64,000 nucleotides of DNA from IMGVR_UViG_3300026484_000087:1-64000; one strand, 5' to 3'; shown: positions 21,825-64,000, numbered from the stretch's first letter. Notes: generated from the letters alone by a model not told the origin. A program made the numbers and translations.

Positions 21825-21850
21825 TAGTAAGTAGGAAATCCTACTTACTA
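21825..21850 (-). terminator. Intrinsic terminator after thyX
   Basis: 12-bp stem; T-tract a few nt downstream on the - strand. Confidence 0.6.
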
Positions 21851-22717
21851 CTTAGCTTTAATTATAAGATCTAAATATTTACTTGGGGTAACTTCTTTCA
21901 TCACTTTTGCTAAATTTCTTATCTGGAAATAAGCACTACCTGCATCCCTTAAATAGAAGTAGTTCTTTAAACTTCTTAGATTAAATGTAACAACCATATC
22001 TACTTTTACATTATCTGTCACCAAGTGCTTAAAAGAATCTCCAACATTTCTCTTCTTAGGTCCTTTTTCTAAAGCTTCAAATAGATCATGACTATCTATA
22101 TATCTTCCATTAAACAGCTCTAAAGAACTCTTAGCTACGCTTATCTTAAGGAACTCTTCTTTACCTATTCTATCTCTTTGTAAGATTAATTTCTTAAACA
22201 TAGCTTCTATTTCTATATTTAAATAATCATTATCATCAATAACAAACATATCAAATTGCTTCATTTTCAATAAGAAGAATTGTATTGGACTCTGACTATT
22301 TAAAGACGCTATAAATGCATGAATTATACTAGCCATAGTATAACGAGTACTTCTAACACTTATGGCTTGAATCCTATGCCTAGCATGCTCTTGAAGTACG
22401 CCTCTGGAGATTCCTTTTATAAGATAACTTAGATTTATATGTTCAAGTATACTGTGGTGAAAATATGTAAATGATAAATCTTTTAATAACTCACATTCGT
22501 CAATACTATTAAGATTATCTCTAAACATATCATCATATGTATCTTGTGTTAAACCACTATCTTGACAATTAGCCATATCTGCAACAACTTCATTTGTACT
22601 CTTACTAAAACTATCATAACATGTTCTAGCAGCGTACTCAGAAACACCTATACCTGTTTCTTGCAATAATATAACCTCTGGTGTTGTATATTTAAGACCT
22701 GCAACTTCATTAACCAT
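21848..22717 (-). CDS. thyX: FAD-dependent thymidylate synthase
   Basis: HHSILEH, ISRGVLQEHARHRIQAISVRSTRY (ThyX motif), NLRSLKNY. Confidence 0.92.
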   Translation of the reverse strand: MVNEVAGLKYTTPEVILLQETGIGVSEYAARTCYDSFSKSTNEVVADMANCQDSGLTQDTYDDMFRDNLNSIDECELLKDLSFTYFHHSILEHINLSYLIKGISRGVLQEHARHRIQAISVRSTRYTMASIIHAFIASLNSQSPIQFFLLKMKQFDMFVIDDNDYLNIEIEAMFKKLILQRDRIGKEEFLKISVAKSSLELFNGRYIDSHDLFEALEKGPKKRNVGDSFKHLVTDNVKVDMVVTFNLRSLKNYFYLRDAGSAYFQIRNLAKVMKEVTPSKYLDLIIKAK

Positions 22718-22727
22718 TTTTTTCTCC

Positions 22728-22967
22728 TTATAATTTAACTTTTATATTATAATAAAAATTAAGGTAATCTTCTATCTCTTTTAATGTATCCATTTTGGCT
22801 ATCTCTGTTAATAGTAACTCTTCACTATCAAACATCCTCTTGCGTGTTAATAATACATAACCCCTATGACATAGTCTTTTTCTAACATAAACCTTTTCAC
22901 CACCTATCACAGCATTTAGTTCAACTGACGGCAAATATTTAATTGCTTTAATTATACTCATTAACAT
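22728..22967 (-). CDS. Hypothetical protein
   Basis: AGGAG RBS before ATG 22967. Confidence 0.5.
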   Translation of the reverse strand: MLMSIIKAIKYLPSVELNAVIGGEKVYVRKRLCHRGYVLLTRKRMFDSEELLLTEIAKMDTLKEIEDYLNFYYNIKVKL

Positions 22968-23349
22968 TAAATAACTCCTGTAACTCTTTAAGAGTACAAG
23001 GCCTAACATCGCCTACAGTTTGACTACCACCATCGTGATGTACAATACCGCCATCTATAGATCTAATGATAATAACCTTCTTACATATTTTATCATAAGC
23101 TACTATATTAGATTTCTTAACAATGCCATGTTTTACATAATCGTTAACATTAACTATATTGGGACTTAAACTATTCACCACATAATCAAAAAATATCTTA
23201 GCTGATTCCTCAACATTGCCTTCAAATGTTCTCTTTTCAATATCCAAACAACCCATTAGATTATCTTCAGAATGAAAACATATTTTATGCTCATTATGAT
23301 CTTTAAAACTAGTGGGTTCTCCATTAACCATTAAATCTTTATTCTTCAT
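22948..23349 (-). CDS. Hypothetical protein
   Basis: Overlapping operon ORF. Confidence 0.6.
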   Translation of the reverse strand: MKNKDLMVNGEPTSFKDHNEHKICFHSEDNLMGCLDIEKRTFEGNVEESAKIFFDYVVNSLSPNIVNVNDYVKHGIVKKSNIVAYDKICKKVIIIRSIDGGIVHHDGGSQTVGDVRPCTLKELQELFNVNEYN

Positions 23350-23977
23350 TACATACTCCTACTACTTCTATATTTAATTTTTTAAGCATATTTATACCTG
23401 AAGTATCTTTATACTTTTCAAAATAGACAACCCTAGATATTCCAGACTGGGCTATAAGTTTAGAACATTGCTTACATGGACTAGTGGTAACATAAAGTGT
23501 AGCCCCAGCTGTACTAATACCCTCTTTAGCACAGAATGCGATGACATTCTGTTCAGCATGAACTGTGAAATCATTAGTTACCAAACTAAGACCCTCTATA
23601 CCATTACCTTTATCAGTAACTATAACATACTCACCACACCTACAAGATGCCCTATATTCTTTTACAAGATCTACTTCACCACCCTCTTTAAACATATTAA
23701 CATAAGAACTTGTTTCAAATTGTTCTATGTTCAATTCTGTACCACATTTATTACAAACTACAACATTATCTTCACAGTTATTCTCTACACCATTTATTGT
23801 ACCATTGTAACCAGTAGCTAATATTCTATTATCTATAGATAACACTGCACCAACTTTACGTCTTTTACAATACGACATCTCGGACCATATGTGAGCAGTA
23901 TCCATCATAACTTTATCATATTTATTTGGATAAGTAGTAATGAATTTATATTTTCTTTTATATTTCTCATCAAACAT
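23339..23977 (-). CDS. dCMP deaminase with an inserted Cys-rich segment
   Basis: SYCKRRKVGA, TGYNG, HAEQN, PCKQC; insertion containing CNKC...CRC. Confidence 0.92.
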   Translation of the reverse strand: MFDEKYKRKYKFITTYPNKYDKVMMDTAHIWSEMSYCKRRKVGAVLSIDNRILATGYNGTINGVENNCEDNVVVCNKCGTELNIEQFETSSYVNMFKEGGEVDLVKEYRASCRCGEYVIVTDKGNGIEGLSLVTNDFTVHAEQNVIAFCAKEGISTAGATLYVTTSPCKQCSKLIAQSGISRVVYFEKYKDTSGINMLKKLNIEVVGVCNEE

Positions 23978-24273
23978 TAAACATCTCCTTTAATAATTAA
24001 TAAATCTTCATGTATACTATCAAGTACTATTTTTAAATATGATCTAGCAAATATGAATTTAGTAATAACCGCTATCCTATATTCTTTTGGATCCAGATCT
24101 GATAGTGGGTCATTTAATAAATAGTGTGTATCGCTATAATACCTAAAATAAGCATTATATTTAGATACTTTATCTCTAATCATATTTTCTATATATAGAT
24201 CAATATCTAAACCATATAATATGTCTTCAACATTTATAGCATCAAACTTAAGTTCTTCATCATAACACCTCAT
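23977..24273 (-). CDS. Hypothetical protein
   Basis: Translationally coupled ORF. Confidence 0.6.
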   Translation of the reverse strand: MRCYDEELKFDAINVEDILYGLDIDLYIENMIRDKVSKYNAYFRYYSDTHYLLNDPLSDLDPKEYRIAVITKFIFARSYLKIVLDSIHEDLLIIKGDV

Positions 24274-25597: not shown

Positions 25598-26722
25598 TTA
25601 AATTATACTTGACAACTCTTCGTTAGCCAACGCATTTAATTCCTCATTGTCATTTATAGTATCAAGTTCTTTATTAATAAGTTCTTTAATATTACTACTT
25701 GTTATGCTTATGTTAACTATAGGATCATACTTAAGAACATTATCAGTTACTTTCTTTTCATTGGTATCTTTCATATGTTTGTTACTAAAGTTATAATCTT
25801 TAAATCTTTTATATACTTCCAGCAATGATTTATAAATAGGATTAAACTTATCAATAACTAAACGTATATGCGAATTTATCGGATACTTCTTTAATTCTAT
25901 TGTTAAGATATTTATAAGCTCATTAACATCTTCTGTATTAACTGATATGGATTTAAATATACATGCGTTATCATTAACTAAGAACTTATAAGTATTATCA
26001 CCGTTTGGATCAAGTGCTATAAGCATGGCACCTTTATCCTCTTCTTCATTATGGGCTAACCTGTCAAATGATCCCTGTGCAAGTATTCTCTTATAGATAG
26101 ACATACTATGTATGTGTCCTATTGATATATAATATCTAACAAGTTTAAGATATTCAAATTCATCATGCATACTAGGAAGTTCAATAACTGGTATTTGATA
26201 TTTAAAAGCTCCATGCATTACGGCTATGTCTACTTTATCTATACCCTTATCATCCATTAAAGTTTTAACATCCTTAAGTACTTTTTCAGACTCATGGTGT
26301 ATTTCATCTGGTACATACAATATATCTAAATTAAAACCAGACAATGTTTCTATGTATATATTATCTATATATTTAAAATCAACATTTATTTTTAATTTTT
26401 TAATAATTACATTAAGAACATTTGCCTGTCTAGAATCATGACTTGGTGTACCCTCTAATAGTCTTAAGATTATGTTATTCTTTTTACAATAATAGACTAA
26501 ATTAGTTAACCACTCTGTAGCAAGTATATTATCCGTAGATGATGATGATAATAATCTATCAAAGATATCTCCTGCTATTACGATCATATCTAAACCAGAT
26601 AAAACAGTATTATATTTTAAGAAAAAACTATTTAAATTATTTATTATATTTTCTGTCTTATTTTTATTACTACCAAAATGGATATCGCTTAGAACTAAAT
26701 ATTTTATCTTTTTTGTTAACAT
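25598..26722 (-). CDS. sbcD: SbcD/Mre11-family metallophosphoesterase nuclease
   Basis: SDIH, GDIFD, GTPSHD, MHG, GHIH, GSFDRL. Confidence 0.88.
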   Translation of the reverse strand: MLTKKIKYLVLSDIHFGSNKNKTENIINNLNSFFLKYNTVLSGLDMIVIAGDIFDRLLSSSSTDNILATEWLTNLVYYCKKNNIILRLLEGTPSHDSRQANVLNVIIKKLKINVDFKYIDNIYIETLSGFNLDILYVPDEIHHESEKVLKDVKTLMDDKGIDKVDIAVMHGAFKYQIPVIELPSMHDEFEYLKLVRYYISIGHIHSMSIYKRILAQGSFDRLAHNEEEDKGAMLIALDPNGDNTYKFLVNDNACIFKSISVNTEDVNELINILTIELKKYPINSHIRLVIDKFNPIYKSLLEVYKRFKDYNFSNKHMKDTNEKKVTDNVLKYDPIVNISITSSNIKELINKELDTINDNEELNALANEELSSII

Positions 26723-28546: not shown

Positions 28547-28898
28547 AACTCATCGATCCATAAATTATTCCACCAAGCTTATCCTGATTATTTGCTATAG
28601 ATATTTTATAAGTTAATTCGCCTATAGTAAAATTAATACTAATAGCTGAATCAGTATCCTCAACAACATTTCTATAGTTAAACACAAATGCATCTGCAAC
28701 AATCCTAGATATAATCTCTTCAGATAAGGGTATATCCATTATAGGAGAAAATGTATTATCCTCACATACAGTAAAACCTTTTACTATATCAGTAATCATA
28801 TCCAAAAACTTATCTTCATTCATATGTGCATTATAAAGATAATCGTTTACCTTAGTAAACTCCATCTCCTTAATGATTAATTCTTTATATAAGTTCAT
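28545..28898 (-). CDS. Hypothetical protein
   Basis: Overlaps the end of the upstream gene. Confidence 0.6.
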   Translation of the reverse strand: MNLYKELIIKEMEFTKVNDYLYNAHMNEDKFLDMITDIVKGFTVCEDNTFSPIMDIPLSEEIISRIVADAFVFNYRNVVEDTDSAISINFTIGELTYKISIANNQDKLGGIIYGSMS

Positions 28899-30249
28899 CT
28901 TTATCCTTTTCTATAAATACATTTAAAATAGTACTACGCATCTTAGAAGACACATTGCATAAAGTATAGTGGCTTTGTAAGACACCATTAACTCTAATAA
29001 CATTATTGTCATCTCCTAAATAAACGTATATAACCGACATCCCCGGCAATAAATACTTGGGATTTGAAAAGTTCCATTTTAATTGCAACATATCACCATT
29101 TAGTTTCATATAATCTGAACGCATATGATATAAATTATCTGTTGGTTCTTTAACTGTTCTATACATAGAACCATCTCTTTTATCCTTAAGATAATTCTCT
29201 ATATTAACGCTGTCTTTAGAATTTATAACCATTGGTTCTAAGACATCAACCGGTCTATGCATAACCTTATTAACATCTAAAACAACATAACCAACACCTT
29301 TATCTGTAAAATCAGTATCTCCTTTGTTTATCTTTTTAGAATCATCATTTGATATTATATGGATATCCTCATTCTCTATCAAATACGTATTCTCTACCTG
29401 AGAATACTTTATATTAGGAACCCCATAAATAACCAGTTTATGTTTAGCATTAGCAGATATATCAGGTTTATATAAAGGAAAAACCGATACACTCATAATG
29501 TTTTTACATGGACTACCATCCAAATCACATCTATTGAAATATGTACCCTTTCTATAACGTTCTATGAATAAGCCAACATGTCCATTGAATAAACCATAAT
29601 CCGTTTCCTGTAAGTACGTAGGTAGATCTATAAGTTTTGTACCATTTGGTATGATTATGTGCTCATACTCTCTGGTATTATCCTCATTCTTTAGAGTAAC
29701 ACTAAGTTTAATTGGTGCTCCATTTACCATAATATCTTTTGTTTCATTAATAAATAGACCTTTAACTAAATTACCAGGCTTAACATTTCTATATATACCA
29801 GATATACGTTTAAGTCTTATGGCCTCAACAGCCCTATCAATACATTGACCCCTGACAGTAATATATTCTTGCTCATTGAGTTCTTCCTTTGTTTGGTTTT
29901 TATATCTACCACTACCATAATTCTCATCTAAATTTAGAAAGAGTATCTTATAACGATTTAAATCTTTTCTACCATTGACAACTTCTATAAGACTTATTTC
30001 AACGTTATTCCTATATGGATAAACATGTTTTACCAAATCTCCCATAGGCAATAGAAAATCCACATAAATATAAGCACCTATGTTAGCATTATAATCTTTC
30101 ATAACTTCAACTGTGGTAATTTTATCAACAACAAGATCATCATCTTCAGTATGTAATATCATTTCATAAACTACTTCATTAGTATTATTGTCATTCTTCT
30201 TTACAATCCTATCAACTTCTTCACCTATAAGAGATCTTTCTATTTCCAT
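28885..30249 (-). CDS. Virion baseplate hub-like protein (phiKZ gp101-like)
   Basis: DNTREYEHIIIPNG...LQ...G motif and WNFSNPKYLLPGM; gene order. Confidence 0.55.
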   Translation of the reverse strand: MEIERSLIGEEVDRIVKKNDNNTNEVVYEMILHTEDDDLVVDKITTVEVMKDYNANIGAYIYVDFLLPMGDLVKHVYPYRNNVEISLIEVVNGRKDLNRYKILFLNLDENYGSGRYKNQTKEELNEQEYITVRGQCIDRAVEAIRLKRISGIYRNVKPGNLVKGLFINETKDIMVNGAPIKLSVTLKNEDNTREYEHIIIPNGTKLIDLPTYLQETDYGLFNGHVGLFIERYRKGTYFNRCDLDGSPCKNIMSVSVFPLYKPDISANAKHKLVIYGVPNIKYSQVENTYLIENEDIHIISNDDSKKINKGDTDFTDKGVGYVVLDVNKVMHRPVDVLEPMVINSKDSVNIENYLKDKRDGSMYRTVKEPTDNLYHMRSDYMKLNGDMLQLKWNFSNPKYLLPGMSVIYVYLGDDNNVIRVNGVLQSHYTLCNVSSKMRSTILNVFIEKDKDELI

Positions 30250-30262
30250 ACGCTATCCTTTT

Positions 30263-31336
30263 TTAAACACTGATCCTATTTATAAAGAAACTATAAACTT
30301 CAAATATTGCATTATACTCACTCTCAGCTATTTTTAAATTTTCAATTATTCTATTTATAAGCATTATTTCAAGATTCTTTATTTTTAAAGATAGAGTAAA
30401 TAAAACATCTATATACTTTAATTGTATATCCGATTCAAGAGCACCGCTAACTAGGGCTTGACTATCTTCTATGCTAGAATACAATGACCTAACCGTACTA
30501 AGAACATCTATTGTTTTATAGTCGTTAAGCAATCCTATAGCCGCTTCCATATTTTCATCGGTATTATTAAGAAGTTTACGCATTAATTTAATAGTACCTA
30601 TATCATCATCAATATTAACTTCTAAAATACTATCTATCAAATCTATTTTATTAATAGACTCTATAAGTTCCTTCTCTTTTGCACCATAATACTGATTTAC
30701 ATTATTTATAATAATATCTATAACAGATGGATCTTTTTTAAATACTTCAGACATCTTAGAAACTGCTTCACTAAACGAATTAGGTATGCTAAGAACACTT
30801 CTTATAGCAGTAGGATCGCTCTTTGCAACCATAATAGTATTTAAATGTTCTTTTACAGCTTTATCTATATCATTTTGTTCAATAGTGTCATCGACGTTAT
30901 TTTTAACCATTAAGTTAATTATAAATGACTTAAGTTTACCTTTAGCTCTCTCTATAAGAACTGGATCTGTTTCTATTTTAGTTAACTTAGCATCAAGAGT
31001 ATCATCATTGGATAATTCAACCATGAACGATTTAATATTGTCAGCTATTTTAGAATCATTATCTTCTATAACTTTAACTACATCCAATAAATATTTTTTA
31101 GCAGATTCTTTAAATATCTCACCTATTACCTTAATTGCATCATCTTTAAGCCTATCATTTTTCAAAACGTTTTGATGTTTCTTAATCTCTGATAAATCAT
31201 AATAACTCTTTACATCTTCAGATAGAATACCATTTAATACTAAATCTATAGTATTTATTGCATCATTATTAAATAATGATAATATAACTACTGGATTATT
31301 CTCTGCAACATTATTGTTCTTTAATTGCTCTAACAT
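30263..31336 (-). CDS. Hypothetical helical protein
   Basis: 357-aa ORF in the structural operon. Confidence 0.65.
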   Translation of the reverse strand: MLEQLKNNNVAENNPVVILSLFNNDAINTIDLVLNGILSEDVKSYYDLSEIKKHQNVLKNDRLKDDAIKVIGEIFKESAKKYLLDVVKVIEDNDSKIADNIKSFMVELSNDDTLDAKLTKIETDPVLIERAKGKLKSFIINLMVKNNVDDTIEQNDIDKAVKEHLNTIMVAKSDPTAIRSVLSIPNSFSEAVSKMSEVFKKDPSVIDIIINNVNQYYGAKEKELIESINKIDLIDSILEVNIDDDIGTIKLMRKLLNNTDENMEAAIGLLNDYKTIDVLSTVRSLYSSIEDSQALVSGALESDIQLKYIDVLFTLSLKIKNLEIMLINRIIENLKIAESEYNAIFEVYSFFINRISV

Positions 31337-31349
31337 ATCTTTCCTTTTT

Positions 31350-31925
31350 TTACATTAATAGACTGTTTAGGTCATATTTAGATTCTCTGATTTTTTTAGG
31401 AGCTATACTTTGTCTCTCTATTTCATCATACTCTATTTCTGGTTCAGTTTTATTAACAACTATTTCAGACATCATTAGACTTCTAAAATCATTACTAAAC
31501 GATTTAGGTTTACTTATATCTTTTTGAATTATAGTTCTTTTGTTTATATTAAATATCTCATTTGCAAACTTATCCATTAAAATAAGATCATCTCTTGGCA
31601 ATGAAGCCTGATTGAGTGATTTAACACCATAGTCCCTCCATGCAATAAGATGTTTCTGTATAACATCATATATCTGCTCTACATCACTTTGCTTAGCAAC
31701 AGATACGGCAAAACCCTTATTGAACTTCTCTATCATATCGACTATTGTAATCTTAACAAGTACCTTTTCATTAAAACTATTATGTCTCTCATCATCTATA
31801 ATGTTTAATGGTACTCCTACAATATCTAACTCATCCTCGCTATATGTAGATATAATAGGAACATAAGCATCATATAGTTTATTAAATATAACATCTGCCC
31901 AATTATCATATATGCCAAATATCAT
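31350..31925 (-). CDS. Conserved protein (phiKZ gp100-like)
   Basis: IYDVIQKHLIAW...PRDDLILMDKFA; gene order. Confidence 0.5.
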   Translation of the reverse strand: MIFGIYDNWADVIFNKLYDAYVPIISTYSEDELDIVGVPLNIIDDERHNSFNEKVLVKITIVDMIEKFNKGFAVSVAKQSDVEQIYDVIQKHLIAWRDYGVKSLNQASLPRDDLILMDKFANEIFNINKRTIIQKDISKPKSFSNDFRSLMMSEIVVNKTEPEIEYDEIERQSIAPKKIRESKYDLNSLLM

Positions 31926-31940
31926 TTAGACTCCTATTTA

Positions 31941-33302: not shown

Positions 33303-33313
33303 ATTATCTCCTT

Positions 33314-50391: not shown

Positions 50392-51090
50392 ACTGAACAT
50401 GATTGCTCCTATCTTGTCTTTTATCTTTGTAGAATAAGACTTATAATTACCACCAAAGTACCTTCGCATAGCAGAGGTCATTTTATCATGTGTTCCTTTC
50501 TTTAAGGGCATTTCCGATAACTCATGCAGTATATATGCTATACTCATTATGTTGTTATCTATATTATAAAGATCTGATTTGGTTTCTAATATACCATTCT
50601 GTTTAAGTTTATCACCCCATATAGAATACATTATAGAACCTAAACCAATAGCCCTATCTTTAACTCTTTTACCGGTAGAAGCAGTAACTTTTCTTTCTTT
50701 AGATTTGATCCAAAATCTAAAACTCGATTCTACAGATATAAGACCATATATAATTATAGGAGAGACATTATATTTCTTAGAAGATTTATCTATAGTATCT
50801 ATAACCAGATTTCTTTGCTTGCTGGACAGAAAAGAATAATTCTTCTTTAAATCATTTCTAAGATCATCCATAGATACACATACAATCATACCATCTGTAT
50901 TTGTGGTTTGTTTTATTACCTTTGTTTTAGTAATTACCCTTTCTTTTACTACCACTCTTTCTTTATATAATAAACCATTATATTGTAGGTACATATAATA
51001 TCCAGCGATACCTGCTAATATAGTTGCTGCCATTGTTACAATGTATAGATATTTAAGCGTTACGAATCTTGGTTGTTTATTTTCATTCAT
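50380..51090 (-). CDS. Membrane-anchored lytic transglycosylase (SLT family)
   Basis: N-terminal TM; LISVESSF catalytic Glu; AIGLGSI; LYNIDNNI; RYFGG. Confidence 0.8.
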   Translation of the reverse strand: MNENKQPRFVTLKYLYIVTMAATILAGIAGYYMYLQYNGLLYKERVVVKERVITKTKVIKQTTNTDGMIVCVSMDDLRNDLKKNYSFLSSKQRNLVIDTIDKSSKKYNVSPIIIYGLISVESSFRFWIKSKERKVTASTGKRVKDRAIGLGSIMYSIWGDKLKQNGILETKSDLYNIDNNIMSIAYILHELSEMPLKKGTHDKMTSAMRRYFGGNYKSYSTKIKDKIGAIMFSKLL

Positions 51091-53215: not shown

Positions 53216-53917
53216 TCATTTTAAAGCATTTAAAAACTCAACTATACGCTCTTTTGCAGATGCATTTTTAAGATTAAAAACAGGTATACCCAGATCCTCA
53301 CATGCATAAATCATAAATGACATGTTACCTGTAGTTTTATAATCAACATCAGCTTTTGTTTCTGCACCATCTGGCGTATATGTTATAAATAGGTTAAGAG
53401 GAGTATTGCACTCATCACCTATTAACATATGTACATTTCTAGCAACGATGGCTCTTACAGTTGGTGGTAGCTTATTAAATGCTTTATGAAATAATGCAGC
53501 ATGACCATATGCTTTTTCAGAAGGTCTATTTAATTTAGCAGTTACATCTTTATTAAAACCTTTCCATGGAAGATAGATTTCAGATCTACTTTTACCAGCA
53601 CTATACCCTTGAAGAGATGCTTTATCCTGTACATTACCATCAAATCTATATGTGAAACCTTTGCTAATAAGTAACTTGGTAAGTTGTTCAATAAGAATTA
53701 TAGTTTCACCAGGAACTTCGCCATGCGACATAACAGTAAACATTCTGTTAAATCTAAGTAAACTATCTTTATCAACCTTAACTGGTTCGATATGATCTTC
53801 CCATAAGTTAACTTTCTTCTTATCATCTTTTTTATATTCTTGCTTAGGCTCTGGAGACGAAGCAATTTCAGATTTTGGTTCTTCAGTACTATCTAAGATA
53901 TCCATTAAATCATCCAT
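53216..53917 (-). CDS. DprA/SLOG-like nucleotide-binding protein
   Basis: EIYLPWKGFN, ARNVHMLIG, YTPDG, IPVFNL. Confidence 0.75.
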   Translation of the reverse strand: MDDLMDILDSTEEPKSEIASSPEPKQEYKKDDKKKVNLWEDHIEPVKVDKDSLLRFNRMFTVMSHGEVPGETIILIEQLTKLLISKGFTYRFDGNVQDKASLQGYSAGKSRSEIYLPWKGFNKDVTAKLNRPSEKAYGHAALFHKAFNKLPPTVRAIVARNVHMLIGDECNTPLNLFITYTPDGAETKADVDYKTTGNMSFMIYACEDLGIPVFNLKNASAKERIVEFLNALK

Positions 53918-53970: not shown

Positions 53971-55254
53971 TTAAGACAACATATCACCTAAATCCATTTT
54001 AACTGTTTTTATAGTAGTATCATGCATTGCTTTCATACTCAGATTAAGTATTGTACCACCAATATTAGTAACGATTAATGGAACGCTATTCGCATTTATA
54101 CTTAAACCAGTACCTGCACATATACTGCATATAGATTCACCTTTACTTAAACAATACATTGGCGATCTCATTTTAACATCTTTACCTATATAAGATTTGG
54201 CTACATTAATATCCTCCACATAAACTATTGTGGACCCAGATACAAGATATCTACCTATAAGGCTTTTATAATTATCATTCGTAACATTCCACATCTTATA
54301 ACCGTTGGTTTTACAATCCCCTTTACTTATAGTAATAGCCGAAGTTGCTCTAAGAAGTATCTTAGCTGTAAGTCCACCTTTATATGTTTCATTACCCCTA
54401 CTATAACTTGCGAACCTAACACTATTAAAATTACTGGCTAATTCTTTTGGATCATTACTATAACCATCTTCTAAGGCATGTTCAACTAGCTGTGCGTCAT
54501 CTTCTGGATTACTAAAGTTAACTTCAGCACCAGTCATTAGGAATAGTTTCTTTCTACTATTATTAAGGATCTTACCACCCATTAATTTACCTAAGGAAGG
54601 ATCATCTTTTAAGAACTCTTTATCATATGCTTTTAACTTATTCTCTATCTCAGCAATAACAGTATAATCTTTAAGGGCATCTGGACCATGTTCTTTAACA
54701 ACTTCCTCTATGAGCTTTTTACGATATTGTTTTATTCCATCTGGGGCTATCATTGACTTTTCTGTAGCTGAAACAGATATGACTTCTGCCCAATTCTGTA
54801 AATAAGTAGAGGCGTCTACAAAGTTAACATATTCGTCAATGCTTATGCCATCTTTTTTATCATCGTTATCCTTAAGAAGTATCGTTATATATTCATTCTC
54901 TATATCACTTACTTCAAAACGTTTATTTTGATAAGGCACCTTAGAACCAAAATTACCACTTAATAAAACATAGTTTAAAAGAACTCTACCTATTGTAGTA
55001 TCCTCATCCTTTTCAACGTTTTCTAAGAAACCTTTTTCTATCTTTATAGTATCTGTTGGATTTAAAATAGCTTTTCCTTTAACAGCACCATCTAAAACAA
55101 TATCTTTACCGTCAACATTAACCAATATAGAATTCTTATCAAACTTTATAAAATCGTTATCTTCTAGACCTATGGAAAACATAGCTATAACCCAATTAAG
55201 CTTTAATACTAACTTATTGTCTATGCTATACTTTAAATACTCTTTAATAGTCAT
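53971..55254 (-). CDS. Virion RNA polymerase beta' fragment (phiKZ gp80-like)
   Basis: TTIGR, R..SYSRG.ET.KGG bridge-helix-like region, DC, MRSPMYC...ICSICAG, MKAMH. Confidence 0.82.
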   Translation of the reverse strand: MTIKEYLKYSIDNKLVLKLNWVIAMFSIGLEDNDFIKFDKNSILVNVDGKDIVLDGAVKGKAILNPTDTIKIEKGFLENVEKDEDTTIGRVLLNYVLLSGNFGSKVPYQNKRFEVSDIENEYITILLKDNDDKKDGISIDEYVNFVDASTYLQNWAEVISVSATEKSMIAPDGIKQYRKKLIEEVVKEHGPDALKDYTVIAEIENKLKAYDKEFLKDDPSLGKLMGGKILNNSRKKLFLMTGAEVNFSNPEDDAQLVEHALEDGYSNDPKELASNFNSVRFASYSRGNETYKGGLTAKILLRATSAITISKGDCKTNGYKMWNVTNDNYKSLIGRYLVSGSTIVYVEDINVAKSYIGKDVKMRSPMYCLSKGESICSICAGTGLSINANSVPLIVTNIGGTILNLSMKAMHDTTIKTVKMDLGDMLS

Positions 55255-57519: not shown

Positions 57520-59133
57520 ATGAATAAGCCGAAATTTAATGGAGGTATTGATCTAACTTCAAATAGACCAGTATCTGTAGCCGACGTTGAAGTAAAAGAA
57601 GAAGGTGCTGTAGTTGAGCCTAAGGTAGCCGATGTAGCTCCTAAAAAAGAGATACAAGAACCAATTAAACAGGAAGAACCTATAGAGGTTGAAAAAGAAA
57701 TAGAGGAAATATTACCTGGTGGACCTATGGTAGATGCTGTAATTATGCCTAGTAGTACATATGAAGATATTTTTAATGCCATGAAAATCATGAATAGTAT
57801 CGACGACGATACGTTTGCTGATGATTTCACAGATAAAGAGTCTTTAGCTGTAGGAATAGTTGCTGATGGTCTTAGAGTAACAGTTAAGCAGAATGCTTTA
57901 GTTAATACTCTAAAAGACAAAGAAGCACAATGGGAACTTGAACCAAAGTATGCAGATAAAGCTTTAACTATCAGAGAACTTGTTGTTGGTAAAAATGCTA
58001 AAGGAGAACTAAAGGGTTCTGCTGCTACAGCTAAGTTTTATAACTACCTTGGACTTGGTGGTATTATACAGGTACCATTATGGCATAGTGGGTTTTGGAT
58101 CTCTTTAAAACCAATTAAAGAATCTGATCTTCTAAACTTGGAGATGTCTATTGCTGACAACCAAATTAGATTAGGTAGGGAAACAAACACTTTAATCTAT
58201 TCTAACTACAGCGTTGTATTTGATAGACTTGTTTTAGAATTTGTTACTAGACATATCCAAAGTTGTTCTTTAGACATTGCTGACATAAATGAGATAACTA
58301 AATATATTAAGATGCAAGATCTTTATCCTTTAGTTAATGGTTTAATTCAATCTATTTATGTTAAAGGTTTTAAAGACGTTAGAACATGTATGAATTCTTT
58401 AAACATAAATCCAGTTACTGGTAAACCTGAATGCGATCATACCATAGAATCCATTATTGATCCTAAGAAATTGTTATGGGTAAATAGAAAAGCTCTAGAT
58501 ACTAACCATATGAAAATAATGGTTAAGCGTGGTCCTAAAACAGTAAGTATAGATGAGGTGCTTGAGTATCAATCTACATTACCTGTAAACAAACCACATA
58601 CGTATACTATACCTACTGAAAATGGTCTAGATATAACAATGACTTTAAAAGCACCTACAATTGATGAACATATTATTAGTGGTGAAACGTGGGTAAACAA
58701 CATTATAGATCTTACTGAAAAATTATTCACTGAGAAACTTAGTGTAGATGAAAAGAACAAGAGAGTTAACGCAAGTAGTAAAATGGTTCTTCTAAGTGCA
58801 TACAATCACTTTATTCAGTCTCTTGGATTACCAGATGGTAGCACTGTTAATGATAAAGAAACAATGGACAATATCTTAGAGATGCTAGTTTCTGATCAAG
58901 TTGCATTTAAAGAGATTCTTAGTAGAGTAAAAGATTATATAGATCTTAACACTATTGCTGTTGTTGGTATTCCTAAATACAGATGTCCAAATTGTGATCT
59001 TAAACAAGGTGATGATAATCTAAATGAGGCATTTAAAGACATTATTCCAATAAATGTACTTGAAGCTTTTTTCGACCTAAGCATTCTCAAAACAAGCAAA
59101 ATTTCAGAAAGAAACCTGGAAGAGAACATCTAG
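57520..59133 (+). CDS. Baseplate-hub/tail assembly chaperone-like protein (phiKZ gp77-like)
   Basis: VPLWHSGFWI, C..C and CPNC zinc motifs, C-terminal IIPIN...FF. Confidence 0.65.
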   Translation: MNKPKFNGGIDLTSNRPVSVADVEVKEEGAVVEPKVADVAPKKEIQEPIKQEEPIEVEKEIEEILPGGPMVDAVIMPSSTYEDIFNAMKIMNSIDDDTFADDFTDKESLAVGIVADGLRVTVKQNALVNTLKDKEAQWELEPKYADKALTIRELVVGKNAKGELKGSAATAKFYNYLGLGGIIQVPLWHSGFWISLKPIKESDLLNLEMSIADNQIRLGRETNTLIYSNYSVVFDRLVLEFVTRHIQSCSLDIADINEITKYIKMQDLYPLVNGLIQSIYVKGFKDVRTCMNSLNINPVTGKPECDHTIESIIDPKKLLWVNRKALDTNHMKIMVKRGPKTVSIDEVLEYQSTLPVNKPHTYTIPTENGLDITMTLKAPTIDEHIISGETWVNNIIDLTEKLFTEKLSVDEKNKRVNASSKMVLLSAYNHFIQSLGLPDGSTVNDKETMDNILEMLVSDQVAFKEILSRVKDYIDLNTIAVVGIPKYRCPNCDLKQGDDNLNEAFKDIIPINVLEAFFDLSILKTSKISERNLEENI

Positions 59134-60702: not shown

Positions 60703-62199
60703 TTAAGTTACAATACTATCAGCATCTACTTCTATTTTTCTCATACTAGCTATAATATTAAGACTATCTATGTTAGTATCATTCTTATCATAAAGATAGT
60801 TAGTTATAGTTGCAATAGTTGGTTTAGGTAGATTTAATAAACCACTAACTTCATTAATGGAATTTCTACCAGGGATTGAATATGCAGGATCTAATGTATG
60901 TGCTTTATCACACATATTATTATCTGCCAATATAATACAGTTTAACTCATCGCCATCAAAGTCAGCATTCATAGCAGCAGTTATAAGAATAGACATACTA
61001 ATGGTATAATCCATCGGATCTGTCTTAAACTTATTAATAAAAACTCTTTGAGCACTACCCTGGTGCAAACTTGGATTTCTATGTAGAATTATAGCTATTT
61101 TACCTTTAGTATAACTATCTCTAAGTAACTCGTTTAAAGCTTTATCAACTATAGGATCATAATTGTTAACTGCGTATATAAGTAAGTTACTTGCTACCTT
61201 AAAGGTCATATCATATCTATTACAAAGAATATTAAGAAGATGCGGTCTAAATGCGGTAACGCCTATCGCCCATGGTACCTCTACTTCATCATACTTATGT
61301 GGTCCAGGAATTGATGTAATTACGGCTCTAAAGGTAAAGTGACCTCTACCACCATAGATATGTTTTCTAAAGATACCTGGTTTACTAGATAGGTAAACCT
61401 TGTTGTAATACTGATATATTCCAGATAAGTCACTAATGGTTCTGGCCATAGCATTTGATTTCTTATTAGGTGTTTGTTTTGGATCATTAACCATCTTAAC
61501 AAATTGAAGAACTGTATCTATTACATCAGCTATACCTAAATTTGTATAGTTACCTTTACTAGTATTTTCGATAATGAACAGTTTCTTGTTAACTATAGGA
61601 AGCCAGTAGCTATATATTAAATCTTTACTATTCCTATATAGATTTAAAAGACCTTCAATTATCTCTTTCTTTCTAGGTGTTTTAAATGTAGAGTAATTCT
61701 GAAGAAAGATAAGAATGTTCTCTATATTGTCAACTAAGAAAGGATAACTTCTCTCAAAGTTTGGAAGAGTATTCTTAATAGCTATTAAGAAATCTGGTAT
61801 CTCGGTACCAGGATTATAACTAGTATCGGATAACCAACGCATACAATCTATCTTTTTACCCATAACTGTACGCAACATTAGCCAAAAGTGGGGACTCATG
61901 AACTTGGGCATATCGTCGATAGCATGTAACCATAATAATGGATCTGTTTTATCCTGAAATTCTCTTACAGTAGTAGAACATTTAGGACAAATTTTACCAC
62001 TAAGATAACCGCCTTTCATATGTCCACAATCACATGCTGGGACCATTGAAATAGTGTTATCATCATATACTGTTAAAAGTGCATTTGTTATTCTCTCTCT
62101 ATCTTCTATAGAATAGTATTTAACATCATTAAGTACTATTTTATCACCTGTTGTTTCTTTATAATAAGTGTCAAGATTTTTTAATCTTTGAAATATCAT
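60703..62199 (-). CDS. nvRNAP beta' N-terminal catalytic subunit (phiKZ gp55-like)
   Basis: CDC...CPKC zinc finger, KPGIFRKHIYGGR, RAVITS, RNPSL, NADFDGD catalytic motif. Confidence 0.93.
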   Translation of the reverse strand: MIFQRLKNLDTYYKETTGDKIVLNDVKYYSIEDRERITNALLTVYDDNTISMVPACDCGHMKGGYLSGKICPKCSTTVREFQDKTDPLLWLHAIDDMPKFMSPHFWLMLRTVMGKKIDCMRWLSDTSYNPGTEIPDFLIAIKNTLPNFERSYPFLVDNIENILIFLQNYSTFKTPRKKEIIEGLLNLYRNSKDLIYSYWLPIVNKKLFIIENTSKGNYTNLGIADVIDTVLQFVKMVNDPKQTPNKKSNAMARTISDLSGIYQYYNKVYLSSKPGIFRKHIYGGRGHFTFRAVITSIPGPHKYDEVEVPWAIGVTAFRPHLLNILCNRYDMTFKVASNLLIYAVNNYDPIVDKALNELLRDSYTKGKIAIILHRNPSLHQGSAQRVFINKFKTDPMDYTISMSILITAAMNADFDGDELNCIILADNNMCDKAHTLDPAYSIPGRNSINEVSGLLNLPKPTIATITNYLYDKNDTNIDSLNIIASMRKIEVDADSIVT

Positions 62200-62255: not shown

Positions 62256-62268
62256 GGTTATGATATAT

Positions 62269-62661
62269 TTACTTAATATTTAATCTACCTGCTTCCATTA
62301 CTGGGATGTTCGCTTCAGTAGGCACATATATAATCTTTTCAATATTACCATTATTTAATGCTTCTCCAAATGCACCTAAGAACTCTTGATATCTGTACTC
62401 TGGATATTTCTTTGCAGCCTCACCAACTATTTTAATTGCTTGTGCTCTAAGCTTTGATGCCTCTAGTTCACCCCTAGCCTGTTCAATTTGTATTTGTCTA
62501 GATTGAGTAGCCTCTGCTAACTTGGCTCTACCTGACATCTCCATAGACCAAACCTTATATTTAGGTATTATAAACATTAATGTCGCAATACAAACCATTA
62601 TTAAAATACCATATGCAATTAGATCAACCCTTACCATAAACTCTTTTTCATTATTATTCAT
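62269..62661 (-). CDS. Small membrane protein resembling the SPFH/band-7 C-terminal region
   Basis: N-terminal TM, GRAKLAEA coiled coil, IIYVPTEANIPVMEAGR; start ATG 62661. Confidence 0.7.
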   Translation of the reverse strand: MNNNEKEFMVRVDLIAYGILIMVCIATLMFIIPKYKVWSMEMSGRAKLAEATQSRQIQIEQARGELEASKLRAQAIKIVGEAAKKYPEYRYQEFLGAFGEALNNGNIEKIIYVPTEANIPVMEAGRLNIK

Positions 62662-62698
62662 CTTCTTTTTTCCTTTATAAATTAAACTAAAAAATAAA

Positions 62699-62729
62699 GA
62701 CAAGCTTGGTAATAAATACCAAACTTATC
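62699..62729 (-). terminator. Intrinsic terminator after chimallin
   Basis: 13-bp stem with two G.U pairs on the - strand, followed by UUUAUUUUU. Confidence 0.7.
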
Positions 62730-62737
62730 TTAAACTA

Positions 62738-64000
62738 TTATTGAAATCTGTTAAAACCTGCAGTAGCATATGGTGTTTGGTAAGAATTACCACCAGCAAA
62801 TGATCTTGCAAAGTCAGCAGATTGTTGACCAATACCTGCACCAGATAAGTAATTACCAATAGCAGCAATAGAACTTTGTTCTGTAAACTGTACTTCTGGA
62901 TCATATCTAGTCTCGAAACCAGCTGAAGCACATGCACTAGATAACGTTTGGATAAATTTACTAGAGAATGTAACTCTTGTAGCTTTACCAGAAATCTCTG
63001 CATTTGGAATAAGCTTGCTGATGATATCAACTTTAGTAATGAATGGATCAATACCAGAAACAGATTGTGGAACATTTGAAAGAGTCCATTTGTTAATGTT
63101 TTCACTAACTTGGTTTGGAGCACTTAATGTAGCAATTGCACTTAAGTCTAGATCTCTAATATCTCTAGATGCACCATCTTTATCTGTCCATGTACCTGTT
63201 GGAATATTAACACCATCATTAAGGAAGATCTCATTAGCTGGGAAATTATGTGGGAATGCCCCATTTGTTAACCATACAGCTGTAGATAAAATCTCTTGAG
63301 CTGCAGCATATTTCTTATCACCAACATCACTGTTAGCTGGAGCAGCAGCAACACCAAAGATTGAAGCAAAGTTACTATATGTACCATAAGCATCGATATC
63401 AATACTGAACATAGCATCTAGCGAATACATTTGTTTAATAAGACTGAATAACTCTTGAGAGTTTAGTTTAGAATCTCTTAAATCTAATGGTTCACCAAAT
63501 CCACTGCTATTATTTTCTAAGTTAGTAGAAATATTCAACTTACCAATATCGTGTAGTTGATCATTTGGTTTTGGAGCAACTGCAGCAAGCCACATATTTG
63601 GTCTAACCATAACAACTGATGAGATGATTGCCAATAAAGCATAACCTGTTGTAGGCATATCTGTATCCATAGATGTTAGAATAACATGTGGTCTAAGTCT
63701 GATCATAGATGTAGAGGCTGCTCCAGGTAATGCTTGAACAGTAAACTCTTCTTGCATAGCATCTACAAAACCTGTAGTTTTACAAACTCTTGTTCTATTG
63801 TTTTGTAGGTTAAGAGACTGAGCAACATTTCTGTTATCAATACTATTTAACTCAATTTGCCAATCAGCTCTAATTGGTTTACCTGCAGCATCCATAATTG
63901 TTGTTGGTAATAAGTTACTATCAATTTTAAGATATGCACCTGGAGCTTCTTTAATAGCTTCACTGATATTTAAATCTCTAAACTCTTTGTTAATTTTACC
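62738..64000 (-). CDS. chmA: Probable chimallin (phage nuclear shell protein), 5'-truncated by the window edge
   Basis: Frame open to 64000; sits upstream of the gp55-like gene as phiKZ gp54 does; D..GKPIRAD and VTFSSKFI..L..A...AG patterns; flexible C-terminal tail; own terminator. Confidence 0.72.
   Translation of the reverse strand, partial: GKINKEFRDLNISEAIKEAPGAYLKIDSNLLPTTIMDAAGKPIRADWQIELNSIDNRNVAQSLNLQNNRTRVCKTTGFVDAMQEEFTVQALPGAASTSMIRLRPHVILTSMDTDMPTTGYALLAIISSVVMVRPNMWLAAVAPKPNDQLHDIGKLNISTNLENNSSGFGEPLDLRDSKLNSQELFSLIKQMYSLDAMFSIDIDAYGTYSNFASIFGVAAAPANSDVGDKKYAAAQEILSTAVWLTNGAFPHNFPANEIFLNDGVNIPTGTWTDKDGASRDIRDLDLSAIATLSAPNQVSENINKWTLSNVPQSVSGIDPFITKVDIISKLIPNAEISGKATRVTFSSKFIQTLSSACASAGFETRYDPEVQFTEQSSIAAIGNYLSGAGIGQQSADFARSFAGGNSYQTPYATAGFNRFQ

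What the first reader, a model, noticed from the sequence alone, without database searches (positions are those of the whole stretch)
21848..64000. Possible nucleus-forming jumbo phage of Campylobacterota
Seen: probable chmA, picA-like and both RNAP types in very AT-rich DNA, with AAGGA as the dominant RBS. ThyX (RTCYDSF...H.SILEH...I.GISR..LQE.ARHR...SV.STRYT) resembles Campylobacter/Arcobacter-type ThyX as I recall it. Established: characterised chimallin phages infect mainly Gamma- and Betaproteobacteria. Inference: the host may be Arcobacter/Sulfurimonas/Campylobacter-like, which would widen the host range of the phage nucleus.
Basis: inference. Interest (0 to 1): 0.65.

Follow-up and report, generated by a model that had tools for sequence, protein, structure and literature searches.

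The report
Vent chimallivirus with Campylobacterota-like host genes
The window is the first 64 kb of a 206-kb hydrothermal-vent jumbo phage that carries the full gene kit for building a phage nucleus, and its borrowed metabolic genes are closest to those of Campylobacterota, a bacterial group from which no such phage has been isolated; the host itself is still unproven.

Summary
The window is the start of one 206,244-bp viral contig (29.8% GC, no tRNA) from a hydrothermal vent metagenome.

It has a full-length 637-aa chimallin:
- Pfam PF25677 scores 45.5 bits against a cut-off of 27.
- hhalign against five known ChmA gives 99.9% probability.

It also has a PicA homolog, all nvRNAP and vRNAP subunit homologs, a PhuZ-like tubulin, and phiKZ-like order of the core genes. 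It is a deep-branching chimallivirus: TerL is at most 47% and ChmA at most 26% identical to any isolate.

Three host-like genes have their nearest cellular relatives in Campylobacterota:
- ThyX is 58-64% identical to a long form found here only in Sulfurimonas/Sulfurimonadaceae-type genomes.
- DapD is 58-62% identical.
- LigA is 45-50% identical.

In the ThyX and LigA trees the phage copies sit outside the bacterial clade, so the transfers are old and the host family is open.

1,328 spacers from 353 Sulfurimonadaceae genomes gave no match. The host therefore remains an inference: about 0.75 for Campylobacterota and about 0.4 for Sulfurimonadaceae.

Close relatives recur in three other metagenome runs. 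This is a new member of a known kind with a probable new host phylum.

The parts
62738..64000 (-). chmA (chimallin, nuclear shell protein). This is the C-terminal 420 aa of a 637-aa protein; the gene continues to contig position 64651.
   Evidence: Pfam PF25677 scores 45.5 bits against cut-off 27. PDB chimallins match at E 4e-10. hhalign gives 99.92%. It sits between the gp55 and gp52 homologs as in phiKZ.
60703..62199 (-). nvRNAP beta' N-terminal piece with the NADFDGD catalytic motif (phiKZ gp55 homolog).
   Evidence: tblastn against gp55 gives E 4e-53. Pfam RNA_pol_Rpb1_2 scores 34.2 bits. The motif is visible in the translation.
53971..55254 (-). Virion RNAP subunit (phiKZ gp80 homolog).
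   Evidence: tblastn gives E 3e-49. phrog_2962 'RNA polymerase beta subunit' gives E 3e-103.
16409..17878 (-). PicA homolog (phiKZ gp69, the protein importer of the phage nucleus). It lies outside the finding's stated span.
   Evidence: tblastn against gp69 gives E 5e-19 over 497 aa. phrog_3141 gives E 8e-62. It is flanked by gp70 and gp68 homologs as in phiKZ. gp69 is PicA according to PMC11087766. There is no Pfam hit.
17892..19442 (-). nvRNAP fifth subunit homolog (phiKZ gp68).
   Evidence: tblastn gives E 7e-14. phrog_3209 gives E 8e-61.
11514..12758 (-). nvRNAP beta piece (phiKZ gp71 homolog).
   Evidence: tblastn gives E 4e-57. phrog_3295 positions 9-402 match at E 4e-101.
9899..10843 (-). 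nvRNAP beta piece (phiKZ gp73 homolog).
   Evidence: tblastn gives E 7e-45. phrog_3295 positions 404-695 match at E 3e-73.
5676..7706 (-). nvRNAP beta' C-terminal piece (phiKZ gp74 homolog).
   Evidence: tblastn gives E 6e-55. phrog_3015 gives E 2e-139.
4127..5653 (-). DNA helicase (phiKZ gp75 homolog).
   Evidence: tblastn gives E 1e-48. phrog_16 also matches.
21848..22717 (-). ThyX, flavin-dependent thymidylate synthase, long Sulfurimonadaceae-type form.
   Evidence: Pfam Thy1 scores 91 bits. Identity to Sulfurimonas ThyX is 58-64%. Tree.
23339..23977 (-). dCMP deaminase with an inserted Cys-rich segment.
   Evidence: Pfam dCMP_cyt_deam_1 scores 75.8 bits. Identity to Sulfurimonas deaminases is only 41-48% over 60 aa.
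25598..26722 (-). SbcD-like nuclease (phiKZ gp65 homolog).
   Evidence: tblastn gives E 1e-61. Pfam Metallophos also matches.
28885..34825 (-). Block of virion or conserved phiKZ-like proteins (gp101, gp100, gp99 and gp98 homologs).
   Evidence: tblastn. phrog_3245, phrog_3013 and phrog_3289 match.
39046..44499 (.). phiKZ gp89, gp88 and gp87 homologs (head and virion proteins).
   Evidence: tblastn gives E 2e-11, 3e-46 and 2e-70. phrog_3239, phrog_3196 and phrog_3248 match.
48709..50376 (+). DNA polymerase part (phiKZ gp82 homolog, PolB exonuclease domain).
   Evidence: tblastn gives E 2e-59. Pfam DNA_pol_B_exo1 also matches.
50380..51090 (-). Lytic transglycosylase (SLT) with an N-terminal membrane anchor.
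   Evidence: Pfam SLT scores 25.7 bits against cut-off 21.3. The hydrophobic N-terminus is visible in the translation.
53216..53917 (-). DprA-like recombination mediator.
   Evidence: phrog_768 gives E 4e-21.
57520..59133 (+). phiKZ gp77 homolog, function unknown.
   Evidence: tblastn gives E 2e-27. phrog_4585 gives E 1e-79.

Best explanation
The window is the left third of the genome of an uncultivated member of the Chimalliviridae from deep-sea hydrothermal vents.

The life cycle below is inferred from homology to phiKZ-like phages:
- The virion injects DNA together with a virion-packaged multisubunit RNAP (gp80, gp149, gp178 and gp180 homologs).
- Early products include ChmA, which assembles into a protein shell around the replicating genome.
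- PicA at the shell imports selected phage proteins.
- The second, non-virion RNAP (gp55, gp68, gp71, gp73, gp74 and gp123 homologs) transcribes middle and late genes inside the shell.
- A PhuZ-like tubulin positions the compartment.

The phage also carries its own dTTP supply for a 70% A+T genome: ThyX, dCMP deaminase, a dimeric dUTPase and NrdAB. In addition it has a NAD-dependent ligase and a DapD.

ThyX, DapD and LigA are of the types used by Campylobacterota. The most likely host is therefore a vent campylobacterotal chemolithotroph. Sulfurimonadaceae is favoured by ThyX. Sulfurovum or Arcobacteraceae are equally allowed by LigA and DapD.

What is shown is the gene content, the homology and the gene affinities. 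Nucleus formation and the host are inferred.
For: Chimallivirus identity:
- ChmA: Pfam, PDB and hhalign matches.
- 51 ORFs match phiKZ genes in conserved order, including PicA, both RNAP sets, MCP, TerL, sheath, protease and the RecA-like gp152.
- phiKZ-type PHROGs match at E down to 1e-159.
- The tubulin hits Pfam PF00091 at 43.8 bits against cut-off 33, and matches phiKZ gp39 and PhuZ201 in the PDB.
- The genome is 206,244 bp, and the same proteins also lie on a 213,312-bp contig.

Host affinity:
- The source is a hydrothermal vent metagenome.
- ThyX: every named hit in the 5.8-billion-protein word search is Sulfurimonas, Campylobacterales or Campylobacterota at 60-64% identity.
- ThyX: the best 80 of 319 relatives in 185,579 species genomes are all of that group.
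- ThyX: within the phylum only 10 of 201 sampled genomes carry this form.
- DapD: after three unnamed closer hits on metagenome contigs (96, 76 and 67% identity; the 76% cluster lies on relatives' 110-kb and 179,951-bp contigs), hits run at 58-62%, and the named ones among them are Campylobacterota or Arcobacteraceae apart from one labelled only 'hydrothermal vent metagenome' and one Anaeramoba entry from a eukaryote protein set.
- DapD: the full-length PDB match is 2rij at 419 bits, against 190 bits or less for other DapD types.
- LigA: all named hits are Sulfurovum, Aliarcobacter, Poseidonibacter or Campylobacterales at 609-679 bits. Thermus scores 376 bits and E. coli 317 bits.
- The relatives' contigs share these genes: the 179,951-bp contig encodes LigA at 69% and a DapD of the 76% cluster, and locus L128 (110-kb contig) carries that DapD. 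The association therefore predates the split of this phage clade.
- Strong Shine-Dalgarno use argues against a Bacteroidota-type host.
Against: - No CRISPR spacer match. 1,328 spacers from 71 arrays next to cas1 in the 353 Sulfurimonadaceae species genomes gave at best 24 of 30 matching bases, the same as a shuffled control.
- No chimallivirus TerL is binned in those genomes.
- In the ThyX and LigA trees the phage copies lie outside the bacterial clades. They group with other vent phage-like contigs. The transfers are therefore old and say less about the present host.
- The three genes disagree on the family. Sulfurimonas is nearest for ThyX, but it scores lower than Sulfurovum and Arcobacteraceae for LigA (520-551 against 609-679 bits) and for DapD (453-472 against about 520 bits).
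- The phage GC of 29.8% is below the 36% mean of the 80 Sulfurimonadaceae thyX-region loci, each about 2-3 kb around the gene.
- My trees have no rows from other phyla. The only out-of-phylum baseline is PDB scores.
- Nucleus formation has not been observed.
Confidence: 0.72

Rival explanations
1. The phage is a chimallivirus, but its present host is not a member of Campylobacterota. It could be a vent gammaproteobacterium, a member of Aquificota or another low-GC bacterium. The Campylobacterota-like genes would then be old or indirect acquisitions circulating in a vent phage gene pool.
For: - Phage ThyX and LigA branch outside the bacterial clades, with other phage-like vent contigs.
- No spacer match was found.
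- Nearly all isolated phages with a ChmA homolog infect Gamma- or Betaproteobacteria.
- The phage GC is lower than that of typical Sulfurimonas loci.
Against: - Three unlinked genes of different pathways all have their nearest cellular relatives in one phylum.
- The long ThyX form is restricted to a small part of that phylum.
- The genes are kept in diverged relatives.
- No gene tested pointed to any other phylum.
Confidence: 0.2
2. The ChmA homolog is present, but this lineage does not build a closed nucleus. The protein would be diverged in function or merely a remnant.
For: - ChmA is only 19-26% identical to characterised chimallins.
- ChmB, gp67 and other shell-associated proteins of phiKZ were not found by tblastn.
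- No usable structure model was obtained.
Against: - The homology is full length, over residues 88-593, with positions that are invariant across known ChmA conserved.
- PicA, both RNAP sets and PhuZ are all retained in syntenic positions. These only make sense together with a shell.
- The ChmA part of the window is kept at about 97% identity in relatives in two other runs.
Confidence: 0.06

Closest known systems
Pseudomonas phage phiKZ and the family Chimalliviridae
   Same: - ChmA, PicA (gp69), the split nvRNAP (gp55, 68, 71, 73, 74, 123) and the vRNAP (gp80, 149, 178, 180).
- A PhuZ-type tubulin, MCP, TerL, sheath, protease and an SLT lysin.
- Long stretches of identical gene order.
   Different: - Protein identities are only 19-41%.
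- The genome is smaller (206 against 280 kb), much more AT-rich, and has no tRNA.
- It carries ThyX, DapD, a dimeric dUTPase and LigA of campylobacterotal type.
- It comes from a vent metagenome and is not a cultured phage.
- No homolog of phiKZ gp2 or gp67 was detected by tblastn.
Burkholderia phage FLC9 and Ralstonia phages RP12/RP31
   Same: They are the nearest isolates by TerL (46.8% and 44%) and by ChmA (FLC9 25.8%, E 1e-28).
   Different: They infect Betaproteobacteria, have genomes of 277-322 kb, and are still below 50% identity in the most conserved protein. This phage is therefore at least a new genus and probably a deeper lineage.
Uncultivated relatives: a 179,951-bp ENA contig (L139), a 110-kb JGI contig (L128), and contigs in runs X3 and X4
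   Same: - L139 carries LigA (69%), tubulin, RecJ, divDNApol and an Apyc1-like protein in the same order. L128 carries DapD (76%), dUTPase_2 and the DUF488-DUF7831-YAcAr protein near one another as in this genome.
- X3 and X4 contigs are 94-97% identical over window 58001-64000, including chmA.
   Different: They are not described in any paper I could find. Their chmA could not be fetched, because the record is not held.
Sulfurimonadaceae ThyX (long form)
   Same: 58-64% identity over the full length, the same length class of about 277-289 aa, and the same catalytic motifs.
   Different: The phage copy groups with 290-298-aa copies from phage-like vent contigs, outside the clade of all 80 bacterial copies.

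Membership tests
Chimalliviridae (nucleus-forming jumbo phages) | Encodes the nuclear shell protein chimallin (ChmA). | tested here: met
   Pfam PF25677 scores 45.5 bits against cut-off 27. PDB chimallins match at E 4e-10. hhalign gives 99.92% over residues 88-593.
Chimalliviridae (nucleus-forming jumbo phages) | Encodes PicA (phiKZ gp69), a core gene present in all ChmA phages (PMC11087766). | tested here: met
   The ORF 16409-17878(-) matches gp69 by tblastn at E 5e-19, has syntenic neighbours, and hits phrog_3141 at E 8e-62. This is sequence-level evidence only; no Pfam model hit it.
Chimalliviridae (nucleus-forming jumbo phages) | Two multisubunit RNAPs, one virion-packaged and one not. 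| tested here: met
   Homologs of gp55, gp68, gp71, gp73, gp74 and gp123, and of gp80, gp149, gp178 and gp180, were found. PHROG RNAP families match. The assignment of subunits to the two enzymes rests on published phiKZ work, recalled from my own knowledge.
Chimalliviridae (nucleus-forming jumbo phages) | phiKZ-like core genome: MCP gp120, TerL gp25, sheath gp29, protease gp175, gp152 and others. | tested here: met
   51 ORFs have phiKZ matches, many in conserved order. TerL is 41-47% identical to chimallivirus isolates.
Chimalliviridae (nucleus-forming jumbo phages) | PhuZ tubulin (common in the family but not universal). | tested here: met
   Contig 106670-107716(-) hits Pfam Tubulin at 43.8 bits against cut-off 33. 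It matches PDB 9pm9 at E 4e-23, phiKZ gp39 at E 2e-10 and PhuZ201 at E 2e-7.
Chimalliviridae (nucleus-forming jumbo phages) | A proteinaceous compartment encloses phage DNA in infected cells. | not testable with these tools
   This needs a host culture and microscopy or cryo-ET. The single-sequence AF2 model of ChmA was unusable, with pLDDT 32.6.
Phage of Campylobacterota (host assignment) | Host-derived genes whose nearest cellular relatives are in the host lineage. | tested here: met
   Shown for ThyX, DapD and LigA. Family-level signals conflict, and the phage copies lie outside the bacterial clades.
Phage of Campylobacterota (host assignment) | A CRISPR spacer from a host array matches the phage. 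| tested here: not met
   1,328 spacers from 71 arrays in 353 Sulfurimonadaceae species genomes gave no match above the shuffled control. Other families, metagenome arrays and arrays far from cas1 were not screened.
Phage of Campylobacterota (host assignment) | Occurs where the host lives. | tested here: met
   Three of the four holder runs are labelled hydrothermal vent metagenome, in separate studies. That Campylobacterota dominate many vents is background knowledge and was not measured here.
Phage of Campylobacterota (host assignment) | Productive infection of a campylobacterotal strain. | not testable with these tools
   No isolate exists.
ThyX (Pfam Thy1, flavin-dependent thymidylate synthase) | Thy1 domain with the RHR...S..R.S motif. 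| tested here: met
   Pfam PF02511 scores 91 bits against cut-off 24.8. The motif residues are invariant in alignment A1.

The most novel reading that the evidence does not exclude
A whole clade of nucleus-forming jumbo phages has lived with vent Campylobacterota long enough to trade essential nucleotide and cell-wall genes with them. The unusual long-form ThyX of the Sulfurimonadaceae may itself have come from this vent phage gene pool, replacing the ancestral short ThyX. In the rooted tree the bacterial clade is nested inside a grade of copies from phage-like contigs.
Probability: 0.15. Interest if true: 0.72.

Novelty: new member of a known kind. Interest (0 to 1): 0.55.

Why it matters
All cultured chimalliviruses found with this query infect Gamma- or Betaproteobacteria, plus one Bacillus phage. 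A 2025 survey of 2,001 chimallin-encoding genomes does not mention Campylobacterota in its main text (its supplementary tables were not available to me).

A vent lineage tied to Campylobacterota would carry the phage nucleus into a separate phylum and into chemolithoautotrophs of an extreme habitat. It would be a very divergent ChmA and PicA pair for comparative structural work. It would also point to a defence-resistant phage type acting on key sulfur-oxidising primary producers.

It suggests concrete enrichment hosts for isolation: Sulfurimonas, Sulfurovum and Arcobacteraceae from vent fluids.

Tried and rejected
- megablast of window 40-60 kb against INPHARED phages found no match.
- The search for related loci with ThyX as a single protein in genome contigs used non-conserved peptides and found nothing. 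It worked with alignment A1.
- The search for related loci with ChmA in viral contigs found nothing as a single protein. The alignment of six ChmA was too divergent to give patterns.
- The genome search on the relative's JGI record failed because the record is not held, so the relatives' chmA was not fetched.
- The AF2 single-sequence model of ChmA had pLDDT 32.6 and pTM 0.21. I discarded it and ran no fold search. The large representative search was not spent on building an alignment, because Pfam had already named the protein.
- Pfam found nothing for the PicA, gp70, gp68, gp66 and gp77 homologs.
- dCMP deaminase against Sulfurimonas gave only 41-48% over 60 aa, which is not diagnostic. RecJ at 30%, NrdA at 48-49% and dUTPase at 43-44% had no out-group baseline and were left as uninformative.
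- A DNA search of window 44001-64000 against 121 Sulfurimonadaceae genomes gave five short matches. The three best were fetched; of these, the top two were inspected (the third was not): the best lies in low-complexity Glu/Lys-coding sequence, and neither lies in a repeat array.
- The cas1-anchored spacer screen found no match above the shuffled control.
- TerL was searched in 353 Sulfurimonadaceae genomes to catch mis-binned phage contigs, and none was found.
- Control genomes of family searches are not returned as loci, so my trees have no rows from other phyla.
- The listing of cluster members returned truncated names and added no taxonomy.
- No supplement of the 2025 survey is held.
No alternative genetic code was needed. 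No broken toxin gene was met.

Full report
**What the sequence is.** The window is bases 1-64000 of a single 206,244-bp contig that the tools treat as a virus record.
- The contig is 29.8% G+C, 93% coding by a simple ORF call (225 ORFs, three quarters on the minus strand), and has no tRNA and no terminal repeat.
- Its own ThyX and LigA are also recorded on a 213,312-bp contig, so the record may lack about 7 kb.
- The only sequencing run holding all sampled words is labelled hydrothermal vent metagenome.

**Check of the observation: chmA.** The ORF at 62738..64000(-) runs off the window. The full gene is 62738-64651(-), 637 aa, which is the usual chimallin length.
- It passes Pfam's Chimallin_Phikzvirus model at 45.5 bits against a cut-off of 27.
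- It matches the three solved chimallins by sequence, with E 4e-10 for 7sqt.
- It aligns over 98% of its length to the annotated 'nuclear shell protein' of phage Eowyn.
- It scores 99.92% probability (E 7.9e-35, residues 88-593) against a profile of five known ChmA.
- Identity to any known ChmA is only 19-26%.

**Check of the observation: the rest of the kit.** A tblastn of all 225 ORFs against phiKZ gave 51 matches with long runs of conserved order.
- Reading the window backwards, the homologs run gp75, gp74, gp73, gp71, gp70, gp69, gp68, gp66 and gp65.
- They continue with gp101 to gp98, gp89 to gp87, gp84, gp82, gp80, gp77, gp55 and gp54, followed by gp52 just past the window.
- By the published phiKZ assignments (my own knowledge), gp55, gp68, gp71, gp73, gp74 and gp123 are the non-virion RNAP, and gp80, gp149, gp178 and gp180 are the virion RNAP. 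All ten have homologs.
- Six of them lie in the window. One of each enzyme lies inside the finding's span: gp55 at 60703-62199, with NADFDGD, and gp80 at 53971-55254.
- PHROG matches to phiKZ-type families are very strong.
- The gp69 homolog at 16409-17878 is PicA. Its identity with gp69 and its status as a core gene come from PMC11087766. It lies in the window but before the finding's start.
- AAGGA is the dominant ribosome-binding motif: 57% of ORFs, 31.5-fold enriched, spacer 5-8 nt.

**Beyond the window.**
- A tubulin/FtsZ protein at 106670-107716 matches phiKZ gp39 and PhuZ of 201phi2-1.
- MCP, TerL, sheath, protease, the RecA-like gp152 and a DnaB homolog are all present.
- The nearest isolates by TerL are Burkholderia phage FLC9 (46.8%) and Ralstonia phages RP12/RP31 (44%). 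phiKZ itself is at about 41%.
- This is therefore a deep branch of the Chimalliviridae and not a close relative of any cultured phage.

**Host: what was tested.**

*ThyX.*
- The word search over 5.8 billion proteins gave 60-64% identity. Every hit that carries an organism name is Sulfurimonas, Campylobacterales or Campylobacterota, including a complete Sulfurimonas marina chromosome.
- A scan of one genome per species (185,579 species) with a ThyX alignment found 319 relatives. The best 80 are all Sulfurimonas, Sulfurimonadaceae, 'Helicobacteraceae' MAGs or Campylobacterota.
- Within an even sample of 201 genomes of that phylum the scores are bimodal. Ten genomes score 327-359 bits with a protein of about 280 aa. 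The other 176 matching genomes score only 40-52 bits with the ordinary ThyX of 210-240 aa.
It is a special long form that, among the genomes sampled here, was seen only in Sulfurimonas/Sulfurimonadaceae-type genomes.
- In a tree of 110 rows all 80 bacterial copies form one clade (SH-aLRT 99). The phage copy groups at 97 with four metagenome copies of 290-298 aa outside that clade. Further such copies sit below.
- Three of those contigs were inspected. They look like phage or mobile-element DNA: one-directional small ORFs, an ATP-dependent ligase, an actin-like segregation protein. One is explicitly from a hydrothermal vent metagenome, and one is from the JGI sample that also holds a relative of this phage.

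*DapD (contig 74662-75861).* This is the long type with the THDPS_N domain.
- After three unnamed closer hits on metagenome contigs (96, 76 and 67%; the 76% cluster lies on relatives' 110-kb and 179,951-bp contigs), hits run at 58-62%. Nearly all named ones among them are Campylobacterota, Arcobacter or Arcobacteraceae; the exceptions are one labelled only 'hydrothermal vent metagenome' and one Anaeramoba entry from a eukaryote protein set.
- Sulfurimonas genomes give 54-57%.
- The only full-length PDB match is 2rij at 419 bits. By my recollection 2rij is from Campylobacter jejuni. Other DapD types score 190 bits or less.

*LigA (contig 104639-106594).*
- After relatives at 69, 57 and 53%, all named hits are Sulfurovum, Aliarcobacter, Poseidonibacter or Campylobacterales, at 45-50% and 609-679 bits.
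- Thermus and E. coli LigA score 376 and 317 bits. Sulfurimonas scores 520-551 bits.
- In the LigA tree the phage clade lies outside a strongly supported cellular clade that holds Arcobacteraceae, Sulfurimonas and Sulfurovum together.

*Direct links.*
- A DNA search of 20 kb of the window against 121 Sulfurimonadaceae genomes gave only short chance-level matches. Of the two best, which I inspected, one lies in low-complexity sequence and neither lies in a repeat array.
- I then located cas1 in all 353 genomes of the family; 93 have it. I fetched 115 neighbourhoods and extracted 71 arrays with 1,328 spacers.
- I compared the spacers with the whole phage and with two relatives' loci. The best match was 24 of 30 bases, identical to the best match against a shuffled genome.
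- No chimallivirus TerL is binned in those genomes.

**How I read this.** Three unlinked genes from three pathways point to one phylum, and none points elsewhere. That is hard to obtain without repeated residence in campylobacterotal cells, and the vent origin fits.

The limits are real:
- The copies are old acquisitions, kept in relatives that have diverged to 69-76% protein identity.
- They sit outside the bacterial clades and disagree on the family.
- The spacer screen was negative. That negative is weak, because only species representatives of one family were screened, and only arrays near cas1. The 2025 survey also reports that only 9% of chimallin phages match a host by spacers (PMC12625630).

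I put the host in Campylobacterota at about 0.75 and in Sulfurimonadaceae at about 0.4.

**Distribution.** Contigs of four runs from four studies were laid on window 58001-64000, 6,000 bases.
- X1 reproduces the window exactly. It also holds a second relative, about 80% identical, at higher depth.
- X2 holds that same 80% relative.
- X3 and X4 hold contigs 94-97% identical across the stretch, about 97% over the chmA part.
- Larger relatives exist as a 179,951-bp ENA contig and a 110-kb JGI contig. Each shows part of this genome's gene order: tubulin, RecJ, LigA, divDNApol and an Apyc1-like protein on the ENA contig, and DapD, dUTPase_2 and the DUF488 protein on the JGI contig.
- This is therefore a recurring vent phage lineage.

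**Mechanism.** By homology the phage should behave like phiKZ:
- It injects vRNAP for early transcription.
- ChmA forms a shell around the replicating DNA.
- PicA mediates selective protein import.
- nvRNAP transcribes inside the shell.
- PhuZ filaments position the compartment.

ThyX, dCMP deaminase, a dimeric dUTPase and NrdAB give a self-contained route to dTTP, which is sensible for a 70% A+T genome. None of this was observed directly.

**Novelty and literature.**
- The ChmA query found homologs in 68 isolated phages of Pseudomonas, Ralstonia, Burkholderia, Serratia, Klebsiella, Escherichia, Xanthomonas and Erwinia, and in one Bacillus phage.
- The 2025 survey of 2,001 chimallin-encoding genomes lists Enterobacterales, Alteromonadales, Pseudomonadales, Vibrionales, Bacillales, Corynebacteriales and Neisseria as predicted hosts. 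Its main text never mentions Campylobacter or hydrothermal; its supplementary tables are not held here.
- No paper in the library links Chimalliviridae to Campylobacterota or reports a Sulfurimonas jumbo phage.
- A vent virome study notes that very few Campylobacterota phages are known.
- The contig itself is public and may already be counted in such surveys.

The finding is therefore a new, deep-branching member of a known kind with a probable new host phylum. It is not a new kind of system.

Noticed in passing
contig 74662-75861(-) (L001:12662-13861), outside the window: A phage-encoded DapD, the tetrahydrodipicolinate N-succinyltransferase of the lysine and diaminopimelate pathway, long THDPS_N type. 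It is conserved in relatives at 96, 76 and 67% identity. This is an unusual auxiliary gene for a phage, and its role is unexplained.
   Followed up: partly
contig 67392-70532(+) (L001:5392-8532): A SNF2-family helicase of 1,046 aa has LAGLIDADG/Hom_end homing-endonuclease hits at residues 361-443, upstream of the helicase motifs. It may be an intein or an inserted endonuclease. The relative in L128 has a SNF2 ORF of only 693+ aa.
   Followed up: no
contig 66847-67359(+) (L001:4847-5359): A 170-aa protein with a GGDEF diguanylate-cyclase domain (62 bits) lies close to chmA. It might allow manipulation of host c-di-GMP signalling, or it could be a CD-NTase-like decoy.
   Followed up: no
contig 96973-98031(-) (L121:16973-18031): A metallo-beta-lactamase-fold protein hits the anti-Pycsar Apyc1 family below its cut-off (34.8 against 50 bits). 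The homolog on the 180-kb relative carries the same Pfam label.
   Followed up: no
window 20219-21019(+) and 21053-21775(-); also contig 86616-87380(+): Two convergent ORFs each combine a long coiled coil with a similar C-terminal helix-turn-helix ending in ...TYKEC. A third ORF elsewhere has a sigma-70 region-4-like end. They are possible phage transcription regulators and may be paralogs.
   Followed up: no
window 51252-52250(-) and 52376-53188(-): Two neighbouring ORFs share Glu/Lys/Ala-rich low-complexity stretches with the same short motif. One also has a Ser run and a C-terminal hydrophobic segment. This low-complexity DNA caused the best false 'spacer-like' hit.
   Followed up: partly
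window 58001-64000 in runs X1 and X2: A second phage, about 80% identical at the DNA level, co-occurs with this one in the source run at roughly three times the depth. It is also present in another vent run.
   Followed up: partly
ThyX tree; loci L255, L256: Long-form ThyX copies of 290-298 aa lie on small phage-like vent contigs that carry no chimallivirus genes. In the rooted tree the Sulfurimonadaceae clade is nested among them, so the bacterial long form may be of phage origin. The root lies on a very long branch and is unreliable.
   Followed up: partly
window 9899-12758(-): The nvRNAP beta homolog is split into two ORFs (gp71-like and gp73-like) that match the two halves of one PHROG. 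They are separated by about 670 bp holding an 83-aa ORF. This recalls the gp71-gp72-gp73 arrangement of phiKZ.
   Followed up: no
whole contig; The phage's own proteins are also recorded on a 213,312-bp contig, so the 206,244-bp record is probably about 7 kb short of the longest assembly. No terminal repeat was found.
   Followed up: no
Bacillus phage vB_BspM_AgentSmith MW749006.1 99595-101493 (L131): An unannotated 'hypothetical protein' of this 200-kb Bacillus phage aligns with the vent ChmA over 82% of its length (E 7e-19) and with the other ChmA in the alignment. It looks like a chimallin homolog in a phage of a Gram-positive host.
   Followed up: partly
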